IMG/VR virus record: IMGVR_UViG_3300044957_000763
Coordinates: 1-64,000 of that record
DNA length: 64,000 nt
Strand: one strand, 5' to 3'
The notes under the pieces are model-generated. The model did not search any database and was not told where the DNA came from. It worked only from the letters and a program-made list of their open reading frames with translations. The position numbers were made by a program, and so were the translations under genes. Below, piece after piece: positions 32,660 through 33,319 of this stretch (the first letter of the stretch is position 1; each line of letters starts with the position of its first letter).

Positions 32660-32745
32660 TGGTGGCAGTGTGAGGAATCGAACCCCCTATTCCAAGGACA
32701 CCTGGTCTACAGCCAAGCCGACATCCCACTGTCGTCAGCACTGCC
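32660..32745 (-). tRNA. tRNA-Tyr(GTA), second of pair, long variable arm
   Basis: GGCAGTG/CACTGCC acceptor, A73, CCA encoded; anticodon arm CTTGG-CTGTAGA-CCAGG; T loop TTCGATT; atypical linker before the D stem. Confidence 0.85.
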
Positions 32746-32771
32746 ATGCCCCCACTCGTAAGTGGAAATCG

Positions 32772-32858
32772 TGGTGGGGGCCGTGGGATTCGAACCCACT
32801 CAGGCAAATGCCAACAGTTTTACAGACTGGCCCAGCTCTCCTACTCTGGCGCACCCCC
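32772..32858 (-). tRNA. tRNA-Tyr(GTA), first of pair, long variable arm
   Basis: GGGGGTG/GGCCCCC acceptor (G7:G66 mismatch), A73-CCA; CAGT-CTGTAAA-ACTG; GGCA-TT-TGCC variable arm; GTGGG-TTCGAAT-CCCAC. Confidence 0.85.
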
Positions 32859-32885
32859 GGTTGTATAGTTATAGTCACTTTCCAT
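32841..32885 (-). CDS. Mini-ORF MESDYNYTTGGAPE* (Tyr-codon leader), stops inside the D loop of tRNA-Tyr
   Basis: ATG GAA AGT GAC TAT AAC TAT ACA ACC GGG GGT GCG CCA GAG TAG, preceded by purine-rich GAAGAGAGAAAGAAA. Confidence 0.6.
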   Translation of the reverse strand: MESDYNYTTGGAPE

Positions 32886-32931
32886 TTTCTTTCTCTCTTC
32901 TCTTACACGTCGATACAAACTGTCTGCGCCA

Positions 32932-33007
32932 GGGGTGACCAAAGGAACTCGAATCCTCAATCTTCTGGGCCACAACCAGACGCTTTAACCGATTAAGCTA
33001 TGGCCAC
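32932..33007 (-). tRNA. tRNA-His(GTG), second of pair (canonical arms; no genomic G-1; 3' end CCT)
   Basis: GTGGCCA/TGGTCAC acceptor, C73; GCTT-AATCGGTTA-AAGC D arm; TCTGG-TTGTGGC-CCAGA; T loop TTCGAGT. Confidence 0.9.
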
Positions 33008-33142
33008 ACCTCGCGCGGTGTTCAAAACTTGGGGCGACCGAGGGGTATCGAGCCCCCTAGTGATTTGGTTCACAGCCAAACCCCCTCGCCTTCTGGGTCC
33101 GACCGCCATGTTATTCAGTTGTGTATGATGATGGTCGTCCAT
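32993..33142 (-). CDS. Mini-ORF MDDHHHTQLNN... (49 aa; His-codon leader) reading through the first tRNA-His and stopping in the D arm of the second
   Basis: AGGAAAAGAACA-ATG GAC GAC CAT CAT CAT ACA CAA CTG AAT AAC; it is the tail end of track ORF 32993..33241. Confidence 0.6.
   Translation of the reverse strand: MDDHHHTQLNNMAVGPRRRGGLAVNQITRGLDTPRSPQVLNTARGVAIA
33030..33107 (-). tRNA. tRNA-His(GTG), first of pair, atypical D/T arms, G-1:C73 encoded
   Basis: G-GCGGTCG/CGGTCGC-C-CCA; TTTGG-CTGTGAA-CCAAA; T loop CTCGATA rather than TTCRANY; no U8. Confidence 0.8.
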
Positions 33143-33166
33143 TGTTCTTTTCCTAACTACAAAATT

Positions 33167-33240
33167 TGGCTGGCACGGGTGGATTCGAACCACCATCTCC
33201 AGGGTAACAGCCTGGAATTCTACCATTGAAATACATGCCA
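33167..33240 (-). tRNA. tRNA-Asn(GTT), second of pair, canonical
   Basis: TGGCATG/CGTGCCA (U1-A72), G73, CCA; CCAGG-CTGTTAC-CCTGG; GGTGG-TTCGAAT-CCACC. Confidence 0.92.
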
Positions 33241-33243
33241 CTA

Positions 33244-33319
33244 TGGAGGCCCGCCTGGGTTCTGACCCCAGCCCTTACCGTTTAACAGACGGCCGCAACT
33301 ACCAGCTTGCTCACGAGCC
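33244..33319 (-). tRNA. tRNA-Asn(GTT), first of pair, atypical
   Basis: GGCTCGT/GCGGGCC, T73, CCA; GCCGT-CTGTTAA-ACGGT; G8 and G14 instead of U8/A14; T loop GTCAGAA. Confidence 0.75.

What the first reader, a model, noticed from the sequence alone, without database searches (positions are those of the whole stretch)
32660..33319. All six tRNAs are queuosine-family (GUN), duplicated, with Asp missing
Anticodons are GTT x2, GTG x2 and GTA x2; I found no GTC (Asp) tRNA in the spacers. All keep U33-G34-U35, the TGT recognition element and the dinucleotide cut by colicin E5-type RNases. Positions 32/37/38 differ between the members of each pair (CTGTTAA/CTGTTAC, CTGTGAA/TTGTGGC, CTGTAAA/CTGTAGA). 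Inference: the array counters a host nuclease or modification defect specific to GUN tRNAs, and loop variation may hedge against nuclease recognition. The set is too narrow to be codon-usage supplementation.
Basis: partly seen in the sequence, partly recalled or inferred. Interest (0 to 1): 0.75.

Follow-up and report, generated by a model that had tools for sequence, protein, structure and literature searches.

The report
Phage tRNA array with codon-matched leaders
Six Asn/His/Tyr tRNA genes of a 479-kb lake phage are one module of its roughly 70-gene tRNA set, not a queuosine-specific device, but each pair follows a tiny conserved reading frame rich in the codons those tRNAs read, which looks like a built-in sensor of tRNA supply.

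Summary
The six GUN tRNA genes are real. Default ARAGORN finds three. The other three are recovered by relaxed ARAGORN or covariance models. All six positions are kept as cloverleaves, with compensatory changes, in seven related phage lineages. They are not recent duplicates: pair members are 55-66% identical.

The window belongs to a complete 478,840-bp phage with about 70 tRNAs for all 20 amino acids, including two Asp-GTC genes elsewhere. Same-anticodon pairs with differing loops occur genome-wide. No TGT gene was found.

The slice is not arbitrary, though. The order Asn-Asn-His-(His)-Tyr-Tyr, then YrlA-like Y RNA, then Rsr (Ro60), is conserved. Each pair follows a short reading frame rich in its own codons: MEDNDNN*, MDDHHH..., MESDYNY.... 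All three recur in most of the seven lineages. The separate Gln cluster (QQQQQ) and Lys cluster (RLKRNKRNY) have similar leaders, and an unrelated huge phage has a Thr-rich one before a tRNA-Thr pair.

My best explanation is that ribosomes pausing on these codons report the supply of charged tRNA and gate folding or processing of the tRNAs downstream. This is inferred, not shown. I found no published description.

The parts
33244..33319 (-). tRNA-Asn-1 (GTT; loop CTGTTAA; G1-C72, U73, CCA encoded; odd T loop GTCAGAA)
   Evidence: ARAGORN -ps90. The minimum-energy fold is a cloverleaf. 16 of 21 pairs are compensatory across 7 lineages, and the loop is invariant.
33167..33240 (-). tRNA-Asn-2 (GTT; loop CTGTTAC; U1-A72, G73, CCA encoded)
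   Evidence: ARAGORN default. RF00005 scores 64.5 bits. Conserved in 7 lineages.
33030..33107 (-). tRNA-His-1 (GTG; loop CTGTGAA; G-1:C73 and CCA encoded; T loop CTCGATA)
   Evidence: RF00005 scores 32.1 bits in the small-window scan. Conserved in 6 lineages with 9 compensatory pairs. Acceptor and G-1 were read from the sequence.
32932..33007 (-). tRNA-His-2 (GTG; loop TTGTGGC; no G-1, C73, no encoded CCA)
   Evidence: ARAGORN default. RF00005 scores 64.1 bits. Conserved in 7 lineages. In L088 it has the same identity set as the candidate host's tRNA-His.
32772..32858 (-). tRNA-Tyr-1 (GTA; loop CTGTAAA as in the candidate host; long variable arm; A73, CCA)
   Evidence: ARAGORN default. RF00005 scores 31.0 bits.
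32660..32745 (-). tRNA-Tyr-2 (GTA; loop CTGTAGA, G37; long variable arm; A73, CCA)
   Evidence: ARAGORN -ps90. The tRNA-Sec model scores 37.9 bits and the tRNA model 23.2.
33367..33390 (-). Asn leader reading frame MEDNDNN* with GAGGA 9 nt upstream of the ATG
   Evidence: Translation. Relatives have MEDNDNN*, MEENDNN*, MEEGNNI*, MEDDNNNN* (twice) and MEDDNKK*. Alignment.
33320..33366 (-). Segment between the Asn leader stop and tRNA-Asn-1, with two mutually exclusive predicted hairpins
   Evidence: Constrained folds in 7 lineages. Both hairpins together beat all but 1-8 of 300 dinucleotide shuffles. Prediction only.
32993..33142 (-). His leader reading frame MDDHHHTQLNN... (three CAT codons at 33125-33133). 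The frame runs through tRNA-His-1 and stops in the D loop of tRNA-His-2.
   Evidence: Translation. M[DE]DHHH[ST].QLN is conserved in 6 lineages, and all indels are multiples of 3. The leader pairs with an acceptor strand of His-1 in all six minimum-energy folds.
32841..32885 (-). Tyr leader reading frame MESDYNYTTGGAPE*, whose stop lies inside tRNA-Tyr-1
   Evidence: Translation. Relatives have MESDYNY (twice), MESDYTY, MESDYSY, MESDYTN and MKDDYNY.
32284..32394 (-). YrlA-like Y RNA (T arm, stem-loop and D arm closed by an outer stem)
   Evidence: RF02553 scores 40.4 bits, E 3e-8 for the genome. That is below the gathering score of 69, but it is the best hit in the genome and lies 90 nt upstream of rsr. 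The sequence is conserved in relatives. Fold.
30572..32194 (-). rsr, a Ro60 orthologue (TROVE + vWA_Ro60)
   Evidence: Pfam E 6e-57 and 3e-34. PHROG 850. NCBIfam Rsr scores 499.5 bits, below the cutoff of 900.
33417..33448 (-). Strong intrinsic terminator immediately upstream of the Asn leader
   Evidence: Scan. A terminator holds the same position in all relatives.
33623..33651 (-). Perfect sigma-70 consensus promoter (TTGACA-17-TATAAT), about 175 nt upstream of that terminator
   Evidence: Scan, 12 of 12 matches. Its relation to the array is unresolved.
26459..27709 (-). T4 Rnl1-like RNA ligase, three genes downstream of rsr (context)
   Evidence: PHROG 562, E 2e-31. PDB 2c5u/5tt6, E 6e-6. 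NCBIfam RnlA scores 39 bits, below the cutoff. Syntenic in relatives.

Best explanation
The six genes are the Asn/His/Tyr module of the near-complete tRNA set of a 479-kb phage from lake water. Each anticodon is served by two old, distinct genes.

The module is read on the minus strand in this order: terminator, Asn leader, Asn-1, Asn-2, His leader, His-1, His-2, Tyr leader, Tyr-1, Tyr-2, YrlA-like Y RNA, rsr. Each pair follows a very short reading frame whose codons are mostly the ones that pair decodes.

My proposal is that ribosomes translating these frames sense the supply of charged Asn-, His- and Tyr-tRNA.

- When supply is ample, ribosomes run to the stop (Asn) or on into the tRNA sequence (His, Tyr). 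The RNA then adopts, or is forced into, forms that block the acceptor end of the pre-tRNA.
- When supply is short, ribosomes pause on the cognate codons. The leader is held in the ribosome, the tRNA folds and can be processed.

This would give each tRNA group a private feedback loop.

What is shown: the genes, the whole-genome tRNA set, the synteny, and the conserved codon-matched frames. What is inferred: that the frames are translated, that pausing occurs, and that it has any effect on the tRNAs. The role of the adjacent Rsr/Y RNA, which is known elsewhere as an RNA quality-control particle, is not resolved.
For: - **Genome context.** Complete virus record with terminal repeats. 63 tRNAs and a tmRNA by ARAGORN, 63 covariance-model hits, all 20 amino acids. 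Asn, His and Tyr occur only in this array.
- **Conservation.** The array plus YrlA plus rsr synteny holds in L085, L087, L088, L089, L096 and L099, whose Rsr is 93-57% identical.
- **Leaders.** Coordinates and translations are. Cognate residues are kept while flanks diverge. Synonymous changes occur (AGT/AGC, AAT/AAC, CAT/CAC), and indels are multiples of three.
- **Rarity in this genome.** Of 19,330 ATGs, 8 have HHH within 8 codons, 42 have three or more Asn, 90 have Y.Y, and exactly 1 has QQQQQ within 40 codons. That one lies upstream of the Gln cluster. Binomial tails are 9e-5 (His), 3e-3 (Asn), 2e-2 (Tyr) and 6e-3 (Gln).
- **Same design elsewhere in the genome.** The Gln leader ends in ...QQQQQRTRSVA*. 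A relative has ...QQQQQQARPVA* after a wholly different N-terminal part. The Lys leader core RLKRNKR.Y* is conserved in 4 lineages.
- **Independent case.** An unrelated 405-kb phage has MVRFSTITTSTTTTV* 35 nt before a tRNA-Thr pair (P about 2e-7 per frame).
- **Predicted structures.** The Asn leader has two alternative hairpins, and the one favoured when a ribosome sits at the stop abuts the tRNA 5' end. His leader codons 2-5 pair with an acceptor strand of His-1 in all six lineages.
- **Not another known element.** No T-box or other known leader family was hit in the region.
Against: - There is no expression, ribosome or processing evidence. Metatranscriptome contigs of a relative span the locus, but DNA carry-over cannot be excluded.
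- No hairpin-plus-U-tract terminator follows any leader, so classical transcription attenuation is not supported.
- The Shine-Dalgarno signal is clear for the Asn and His leaders, weak for Tyr and Lys, and absent for the Thr case. Only 21% of long frames in this genome show a core Shine-Dalgarno motif at all.
- The structure predictions are only modestly better than shuffles, and the alignment-based consensus fold was uninformative.
- The leaders are so conserved at nucleotide level that an RNA-level constraint (promoter, processing site) cannot be excluded.
- L088 lacks the His leader and His-1. L096 has one Tyr codon. L099's Asn leader has one Asn codon followed by two Lys codons.
- About 55 other tRNAs in the genome have no such leader. 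Five other huge phages show no general excess.
- The promoter of the array was not identified.
Confidence: 0.55

Rival explanations
1. One reading: the array is a dedicated counter-measure to a host nuclease (colicin E5 type) or a queuosine defect that hits GUN tRNAs, with the loop variants hedging against recognition.
For: - All six genes have G34-U35.
- The loop differences between pair members are conserved across lineages.
- One member per pair differs from the candidate host's loop at position 37 or 38.
- An Rnl1-like ligase lies 5 kb downstream and RtcB lies elsewhere in the genome.
- Phage tRNAs that escape anticodon nucleases are documented (PMC10264068, PMC11555353, PMC11464382).
- The leaders also carry Asp GAC codons.
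Against: - The fourth GUN tRNA (Asp) sits in the main cluster, in two copies, without a leader.
- The same leader design serves Gln and Lys, which are not GUN.
- The 'host loop plus variant' pattern is genome-wide: 12 of 20 multi-copy anticodons.
- No TGT or queuosine pathway was found.
- The genome has about 70 tRNAs, so narrowness is not an argument.
- No host nuclease is known.
- The G34-U35 dinucleotide that E5 cuts is unchanged in every copy.
Confidence: 0.12
2. This is plain translational autonomy. The array is simply where the Asn/His/Tyr genes of a full tRNA set happen to lie. The short frames are untranslated, and their conservation reflects promoters, RNase sites or chance.
For: - Huge phages commonly carry large tRNA sets (PMC7162821, up to 67).
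- Most tRNAs here lack leaders.
- No terminators follow the leaders.
- The Shine-Dalgarno signal is weak for Tyr and Lys.
- The leaders are highly conserved at nucleotide level.
Against: - The match between leader codons and downstream tRNA identity holds for Asn, His, Tyr and Gln, partly for Lys, and for Thr in another phage. An RNA site has no reason to show this.
- The frame is preserved through indels, and substitutions are synonymous or conservative.
- The Gln leaders share only the Gln run and the C-terminal end.
- The motifs are rare across the genome.
Confidence: 0.23
3. Some or all of the six, especially the three low-scoring ones, are not decoding tRNAs. They are tRNA-like partners or substrates of the adjacent Rsr/Y RNA particle.
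For: - Adjacency to YrlA and rsr is conserved.
- 46 of 80 viral Rsr loci have tRNA genes within 6 kb, almost all co-oriented.
- The T loops of Asn-1 and His-1 in this genome are odd.
- YrlA RNAs mimic tRNA (PMC4201824).
Against: - All six keep 7-nt anticodon loops with invariant anticodons, plausible identity elements (G-1:C73 in His-1; U1-A72 and G73 in Asn-2; A73 and a long arm in Tyr) and mostly encoded CCA.
- They are the genome's only Asn, His and Tyr tRNAs.
- In other lineages the 'weak' members score as ordinary tRNAs.
Confidence: 0.07

Closest known systems
Leader-peptide (ribosome-mediated) attenuation of amino-acid operons (his, thr, trp, pheA leaders; pheST)
   Same: A short upstream reading frame is enriched in codons for the very molecule being regulated: HHH, a QQQQQ run near the C terminus, or a Thr-rich frame much like thrL. 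Alternative RNA pairings downstream depend on where the ribosome sits.
   Different: The regulated genes are tRNAs, not biosynthetic enzymes or synthetases. No hairpin-plus-U-tract terminator follows the leader. In the His and Tyr cases the frame runs into the tRNA itself. The proposed output is tRNA folding or processing rather than transcription termination.
Poly-cysteine short-frame attenuators in mycobacteria (Canestrari et al., bioRxiv 10.1101/834739)
   Same: Very short frames with consecutive cognate codons act without a terminator. Stalled ribosomes remodel downstream RNA structure.
   Different: There the output is exposure of the ribosome-binding site of a downstream protein gene. 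Here the downstream genes are tRNAs, and the system is in a phage.
Phage tRNAs that escape host tRNA-targeting defences (van den Berg et al. 2023, PMC10264068; T5 tRNAs against retron and PARIS, PMC11555353 and PMC11464382)
   Same: Phage copies of host tRNAs carry anticodon-loop differences. Here one member per pair differs from the candidate host's loop at positions 32, 37 or 38.
   Different: No nuclease is known for this host. The pattern spans most anticodons. The anticodon itself, and the G34-U35 step cut by colicin E5, are unchanged.
Large tRNA complements of huge phages (Al-Shayeb et al. 2020, PMC7162821)
   Same: A genome over 200 kb carries dozens of tRNAs, synthetase-like genes and a tmRNA. 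The tRNA sequences are distinct from the host's.
   Different: About 70 tRNAs covering all 20 amino acids, mostly as divergent pairs. Satellite clusters have codon-matched leaders, which that paper does not describe.
Rsr (Ro60) with YrlA Y RNA in bacteria and phages (Chen et al. 2014, PMC4201824)
   Same: A TROVE + vWA protein has a tRNA-like Y RNA encoded just upstream. Phage examples are already known.
   Different: Here, and in many viral loci, the module sits at the 3' end of or inside a tRNA array. The YrlA match is below Rfam's gathering score.

Membership tests
tRNA genes (Rfam RF00005 / ARAGORN) | Cloverleaf with a 7-nt anticodon loop, scored above threshold | tested here: met
   Four of the six reach 29 bits or more on RF00005 (64.5, 64.1, 32.1, 31.0). 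Tyr-2 scores 23.2 (37.9 on the tRNA-Sec model). Asn-1 is found only by ARAGORN -ps90, but its minimum-energy fold is a cloverleaf. All six show compensatory pairs across lineages.
Queuosine-family / colicin E5 target set | All four GUN tRNAs (Asn, Asp, His, Tyr) treated as one unit | tested here: not met
   Asp-GTC is never in the array in any of 7 lineages. It lies, in two copies, in the main cluster without a leader.
Queuosine-family / colicin E5 target set | Phage-encoded tRNA-guanine transglycosylase or preQ pathway linking the tRNAs to Q | tested here: not met
   PF01702 (TGT) gave no hit in the complete genome. PF06508 gave one weak partial hit (25 bits) in a 634-aa frame.
Queuosine-family / colicin E5 target set | Q34 present, or cleavage at position 34/35 | not testable with these tools
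   Needs APB gels, mass spectrometry or nuclease assays.
Anticodon-nuclease-evading phage tRNAs | The phage tRNA differs from the host tRNA at loop positions used by the nuclease | tested here: inconclusive
   Compared with the candidate host G001: Asn-1, Tyr-1 and (in L088) His-2 have the host's loop. Asn-2 (C38), Tyr-2 (G37) and His-1 (A37) differ. The same holds for 12 of 20 multi-copy anticodons. The host assignment is indirect.
Anticodon-nuclease-evading phage tRNAs | A host nuclease with that specificity, and rescue of infection by the tRNA | not testable with these tools
   No isolate or host culture exists. Not searched for in G001.
Leader-peptide transcription attenuators | Short frame with a start signal and a cluster of regulatory codons cognate to the regulated product | tested here: met
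   The MEDNDNN*, MDDHHH..., MESDYNY... and ...QQQQQ... frames are conserved. GAGGA or AGGA lies 8-9 nt before the Asn and His ATGs.
Leader-peptide transcription attenuators | Terminator hairpin with a U tract between the leader and the regulated genes, alternating with an antiterminator | tested here: not met
   No terminator-like site lies between any leader and its tRNA (and sequences). Alternative hairpins are predicted, but without U tracts.
T-box riboswitch | Match to the T-box leader model | tested here: not met
   No RF00230 hit at E up to 1 (3 kb scan) or up to 10 (0.7 kb scan).
Rsr / YrlA ribonucleoprotein module | TROVE + vWA protein | tested here: met
   PF05731 E 3e-34 and PF25045 E 6e-57. 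The NCBIfam Rsr equivalog scores 499.5 bits, below its cutoff of 900.
Rsr / YrlA ribonucleoprotein module | YrlA-type RNA within 4 kb of rsr, the best model match in the genome, E below 5e-5 (criteria of PMC4201824) | tested here: met
   32284-32394(-), 40.4 bits, E 3e-8, best of 5 hits in the genome, 90 nt from rsr. It is below Rfam's gathering score of 69.

The most novel reading that the evidence does not exclude
A clade of huge phages gates the maturation of selected tRNA groups with miniature leader reading frames made of the cognate codons. The groups are Asn, His, Tyr, Gln and Lys, which all read NAN codons. An unrelated phage does the same for Thr. The ribosome itself would act as the sensor of charged-tRNA supply, and the output would be tRNA folding or processing rather than transcription termination. 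Such a 'tRNA on demand' circuit would switch phage tRNAs on exactly when the host pool of that species collapses, for instance after attack by an anticodon nuclease or after host shut-off.
Probability: 0.4. Interest if true: 0.85.

Novelty: new variant of a known kind. Interest (0 to 1): 0.7.

Why it matters
Phage tRNAs have been debated for decades, as codon supplementation, as replacement of a degraded host pool, or as escape from tRNA-cutting defences. How a phage controls them is almost unexplored.

Codon-matched leaders in front of tRNA genes would be the first hint that a virus measures the supply of individual charged tRNAs and answers with the matching tRNA. They would also extend leader-peptide control from amino-acid operons to the tRNAs themselves. 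The idea can be tested directly with small constructs, 100-200 nt of leader plus tRNA, in cell-free translation.

The work also gives a concrete, conserved example of two long-lived, different genes per anticodon. One resembles the candidate host's tRNA and one does not. That is useful material for testing the nuclease-evasion hypothesis.

For the finding as originally phrased, the result is sobering. The 'queuosine set with Asp missing' is a consequence of looking at one window of a genome that carries every tRNA.

Tried and rejected
- **Recent duplication or anticodon switching among the six.** Rejected. Pairwise identities are 47-66%, no closer than unrelated tRNAs.
- **An 'RNA repair island'.** Only partly supported. 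The Rnl1-like ligase is real. The two genes between it and rsr look like glycosyl- or methyl-transferase-type proteins, not Pnkp. The 295-aa protein has no P-loop or DxDxT motif and no PDB or Pfam hit. RtcB lies far away.
- **A general link between Rsr and GUN tRNAs.** Rejected. tRNAs near 80 viral Rsr genes are of every identity.
- **'TTTT*' before a tRNA-Thr in GC-rich phages.** A false lead. Those calls are tandem YrlA modules.
- **A crude scan for cognate runs upstream of about 400 tRNAs near viral Rsr genes.** No general excess: 103 of 1566 runs. The leader motifs occur only in this clade.
- **Five other huge phages.** No general excess, one strong Thr case.
- **Consensus folding of the MAFFT alignment of the Asn leader.** Uninformative.
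- **Exact-pattern search for the Asn-2 anticodon arm in IMG/VR.** Nothing found.
- **PHROG search of ten large neighbouring proteins.** No hits.
- **Reads.** Only assembled contigs were available. RNA-library contigs of a roughly 90%-identical relative cover rsr to the array, but they give no local depth, ends or strand, and DNA carry-over is possible.
- **LysRS-like protein search in G001.** Not found with this query.
- **Codon bias.** The leader codons (CAT, TAT) are not rare in this genome.
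Full report
**1. The observation**

The stated interval holds six tRNA-like genes on the minus strand. Default ARAGORN reports three: Tyr 32772-32858, His 32932-33007 and Asn 33167-33240. The other three need laxer settings.
- Asn-1 (33244-33319) and Tyr-2 (32660-32745) appear at ARAGORN -ps90.
- His-1 (33030-33107) scores 32.1 bits on the Rfam tRNA model when a small window is scanned.
- Tyr-2 scores 23.2 bits on the tRNA model and 37.9 on the tRNA-Sec model, as long-arm tRNAs often do.
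- Asn-1 has no covariance-model hit, yet folds unaided into a perfect cloverleaf.

Five of the six encode CCA. From the sequence:
- His-1 carries G-1 paired to C73. His-2 has no G-1.
- Asn-2 has U1-A72 and G73. Asn-1 has G1-C72 and U73.
- Both Tyr genes have the bacterial long variable arm and A73.

The members of a pair are only 55-66% identical. That is barely above the 55 +/- 4% seen between tRNAs of different amino acids in this genome. 'Duplicated' is therefore misleading: these are two old, distinct genes per anticodon.

**2. The genome**

The window is the first 64 kb of a complete virus record of 478,840 bp with direct terminal repeats, 44.5% G+C. Sequencing runs that hold it come from lake water. 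Relatives come from wastewater and activated sludge.

ARAGORN finds 63 tRNAs and a tmRNA. The Rfam model finds 63 hits, several of them additional. The total is about 70, and all 20 amino acids are covered. Asn, His and Tyr occur only in the array under study. Asp-GTC occurs twice elsewhere, at 207043-207123 and 213821-213896.

Adjacent or nearby genes with the same anticodon are the rule: Glu-TTC, Phe-GAA, Val-TAC, Lys-TTT, Thr-TGT, Gly-GCC, Leu-GAG, Gln-TTG and others. Their loops often differ at positions 32, 37 or 38.

No TGT gene was found, and only a weak PP-loop match to QueC. The phage also carries a LysRS-like gene next to its Lys tRNAs, a HisRS catalytic-core-like gene, and RtcB.

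The claim that the set is too narrow for supplementation does not hold. Huge phages with up to 67 tRNAs are already on record (PMC7162821).

**3. The surroundings**

Directly downstream on the same strand lie a YrlA-like Y RNA and a Ro60 orthologue.
- The Y RNA is at 32284-32394. It scores 40.4 bits, below Rfam's gathering score, but it is the best match in the genome and lies 90 nt from the next gene.
- The Ro60 orthologue, Rsr, is at 30572-32194 and has TROVE and vWA_Ro60 domains.

Rsr with YrlA in phages is known (PMC4201824). A T4 Rnl1-like RNA ligase follows three genes further on. The two genes in between do not look like RNA-repair enzymes.

Among 80 other viral Rsr loci, 46 have tRNA genes within 6 kb, nearly always co-oriented, and of every identity. 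Some ARAGORN calls in GC-rich loci are really tandem Y RNA modules. Rsr therefore tends to sit in or beside phage tRNA arrays in general, not beside GUN tRNAs in particular.

**4. Relatives**

A protein search with Rsr found close relatives. I fetched six contigs whose Rsr is 93, 88, 75, 74, 70 and 57% identical: L085, L087, L088, L096, L089 and L099. All are syntenic.

All have Asn, Asn, His, (His), Tyr, (Tyr) upstream of the Y RNA and rsr, and none has Asp there. Alignments of each tRNA position show 7-16 base pairs with compensatory double changes. The loops are stable: CUGUUAA in 7 of 7 for Asn-1, CUGUUAC in 6 of 7 for Asn-2, CUGUGAA in 6 of 6 for His-1. The three low-scoring genes of the window are thus under selection as tRNAs. 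The differences between pair members are maintained, not drift.

**5. The new element: codon-matched leaders**

The three long spacers of the array each contain a purine-rich stretch and an ATG that opens a very short frame.
- Before the Asn pair: MEDNDNN* (33390-33367).
- Before the His pair: MDDHHHTQLNN..., starting at 33142, with three CAT codons.
- Before the Tyr pair: MESDYNYTTGGAPE* (32885-32841).

The same frames recur in the relatives.
- Asn: MEDNDNN*, MEENDNN*, MEEGNNI*, MEDDNNNN* (twice) and MEDDNKK*.
- His: MDDHHHTQLNN (twice), MEDHHHSEQLN, MDDHHHSGQLN and MDDHHHSRQLN. The leader is absent in L088, which also lacks His-1.
- Tyr: MESDYNY (twice), MESDYTY, MESDYSY, MESDYTN and MKDDYNY.

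Substitutions include synonymous ones (AGT/AGC, AAT/AAC, CAT/CAC). All indels inside the frames are multiples of three.

Such frames are rare in the whole genome. Of 19,330 ATGs, 8 are followed by HHH within eight codons, 42 by three or more Asn, and 90 by Y.Y. Binomial tails are 9e-5 for His, 3e-3 for Asn and 2e-2 for Tyr.

The design is not confined to GUN tRNAs.
- The only frame in the genome with QQQQQ within 40 codons lies between a TATAAT box and the three-gene Gln cluster. In the relative on G001 the corresponding frame has a completely different N-terminal part but ends in QQQQQQARPVA*.
- The Lys cluster is preceded, at a fixed distance of 148 nt, by M..RLKRNKR.Y* in four lineages. It has one AAG and one AAA codon, matching its CTT and TTT tRNAs.
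- The roughly 55 tRNAs of the two main clusters show nothing comparable.
- Of five other huge phages with 32-53 tRNAs each, none shows a general excess. One, a 405-kb genome whose Rsr is only 39% identical, has MVRFSTITTSTTTTV* 35 nt before an isolated tRNA-Thr pair. Eight of the 15 codons are Thr, all four Thr codons are used, and the stop lies within an inverted repeat.

I found no paper describing such leaders before tRNA genes. The search covers open-access text only.

**6. How it may work (inference)**

No leader is followed by a hairpin with a U tract, so classical transcription attenuation is not supported.

For the Asn leader, folding predicts two exclusive hairpins in six of seven lineages.
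- One starts right after the stop codon and leaves 7-13 nt free before the tRNA. It forms in free RNA, or when a ribosome is held at the first Asn codon.
- The other forms when a ribosome at the stop masks the first arm. It ends 0-2 nt from the tRNA 5' end.
- Both together are stronger than in all but 1-8 of 300 dinucleotide shuffles.

RNase P needs an accessible 5' leader. This is established knowledge, not tested here. The second hairpin could therefore hold back processing when Asn-tRNA is plentiful.

For His, the minimum-energy fold in all six lineages pairs leader codons 2-5 with one strand of the acceptor stem of His-1. Masking the leader restores the cloverleaf in three of them. The frame also runs through His-1 into His-2, and the Tyr frame ends inside Tyr-1. 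Ribosomes that do not pause would therefore plough through the tRNA sequence.

In all three cases the logic is the same. Pausing on the cognate codons favours tRNA folding, and free passage disfavours it. That is negative feedback on the supply of that charged tRNA. The acidic start of all three peptides recalls nascent chains that destabilise early elongation complexes. That point comes from my own knowledge and is a lead only.

Terminator-independent control by short frames with consecutive cognate codons has a precedent in mycobacteria (10.1101/834739).

**7.

A syntenic relative (L088) lies on a 1.36-Mb contig of a 3.8-Mb genome deposited as an Armatimonadetes bin. Phage-type tRNA clusters sit at about 95-520 kb, and ordinary dispersed tRNAs sit elsewhere on the contig.

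That genome's own tRNAs all encode CCA, as the phage's do. Its tRNA-His is unusual: no G-1, C1-G72, A73, loop CUGUGGA. The His-2 of L088 has the same features. This makes the lineage a candidate host, with the caveat that the contig could be chimeric.

Measured against it, one member of each pair has the host's loop (Asn-1, Tyr-1, and His-2 in L088). The other differs at position 37 or 38. But 12 of 20 multi-copy anticodons in the genome show the same split, and 13 of 17 single-copy tRNAs differ from the host.

This fits the published proposal that phage tRNAs carry loop changes to escape tRNA-cutting enzymes (PMC10264068). It is neither GUN-specific nor tested. The five leader-bearing groups all read NAN codons, whose tRNAs carry elaborate wobble modifications and include most known anticodon-nuclease targets. 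That is from my own knowledge. It is suggestive, not evidence.

**8. Expression**

Only assembled contigs of public runs could be laid. Two wastewater metatranscriptomes hold contigs of a roughly 90%-identical relative that cover rsr, the Y RNA and the array in one 3.5-kb piece. The tool warns that DNA may be present, and no local depth or ends are available. This neither supports nor refutes transcription or processing.

The array's promoter was not identified. A perfect sigma-70 promoter (33651-33623) is followed after about 175 nt by a strong terminator (33448-33417). A terminator sits just before the Asn leader in every lineage.

**9. Verdict**

- The queuosine or nuclease-specific interpretation is not supported as stated.
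- The array is best described as the Asn/His/Tyr module of a complete phage tRNA set, placed next to an Rsr/Y RNA module.
- The unexpected part is the set of conserved, codon-matched leader frames. I rate these a new variant of leader-peptide control, with moderate confidence in the proposed mechanism.

Noticed in passing
L149 (G003:C1:183600-184700), positions 363-677: In an unrelated 405-kb phage, an isolated pair tRNA-Thr(CGT) + tRNA-Thr(GGT) is preceded by the frame MVRFSTITTSTTTTV*. Eight of its 15 codons are Thr and all four Thr codons are used. Its stop lies in an inverted repeat, and a TTGACA box lies upstream. It resembles the thr operon leader. No clear Shine-Dalgarno signal.
   Followed up: partly
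G000:C1:256688-256960 (minus strand) and L090:896-1076: The Gln tRNA cluster is preceded by a TATAAT box and a 33-34-codon frame ending QQQQQRTRSVA*. In the relative it ends QQQQQQARPVA* after an unrelated N-terminal part. It is the only QQQQQ frame of its kind in the genome.
   Followed up: yes
G000:C1:167600-167802 (L003:101-303); L140, L141, L142: The Lys tRNA cluster (CTT, TTT, TTT) is preceded at -148 nt by a conserved 12-codon frame, M..RLKRNKR.Y*, behind a GGTATAAT box. A LysRS-like gene follows the cluster (G000 169008-170267).
   Followed up: yes
window 33417-33651 (minus strand): A perfect sigma-70 promoter is followed by about 175 nt and a strong terminator, conserved in relatives just upstream of the Asn leader. 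This could be a small RNA gene or an extra control point for read-through into the array. Weak Rfam matches here (rnk leader, MicC, Thr leader) seem to be driven by the terminator.
   Followed up: partly
L088 and G001:C5 (1.36-Mb contig of GCA_018268375.1): A syntenic relative of this phage, with the same tRNA clusters spread over about 95-520 kb, lies on a contig that also carries ordinary dispersed bacterial tRNAs. It is either a very large integrated or co-assembled phage, or a chimeric contig. It points to Armatimonadota as a candidate host.
   Followed up: partly
L126 (G001:C6:28315-28415) versus window 32932-33107: The candidate host's tRNA-His lacks G-1 (C1-G72, A73). The phage keeps one His gene of that kind (in L088, L089 and L096) and one of the standard G-1:C73 kind. 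It also encodes a 266-aa HisRS catalytic-core-like protein without an anticodon-binding domain (G000 260004-260804). This could be an orthogonal charging pair.
   Followed up: partly
G000:C1:144131-144485, 157728-157803, 233368-233442: The phage has its own tmRNA (tag ANNNFALAV) and two suppressor-like tRNAs with anticodons CTA and TCA. Long frames in the window are open under the standard bacterial code, so I did not assume recoding.
   Followed up: no
L085:3400-3762 and L087:4092-4455: Two relatives carry an extra element of about 300 nt between His-2 and the Tyr leader. It ends in a T-arm-like hairpin, possibly a further tRNA-like or Y RNA-like module. L085 also has an inserted 174-aa gene (weak DUF5679 match) between the array and the Y RNA.
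   Followed up: no
L038:4900-5960: In a GC-rich group of viral contigs, rsr is preceded by five or six tandem YrlA-like modules, one of which ARAGORN miscalls as tRNA-Thr.
   Followed up: partly
window 1-64000, large frames (e.g. 18977-23446, 42317-46705, 55602-63053): Ten large neighbouring proteins have no PHROG match at all, so the phage is far from characterised families.
   Followed up: no
G000 tRNAs at 205077-205170, 256595-256687, 206179-206264, 207043-207123: Several tRNAs that should be short-arm types are 81-94 nt long (Ile-TAT, Gln-TTG, Thr-GGT, Asp-GTC). That suggests unusual variable regions or insertions.
   Followed up: no
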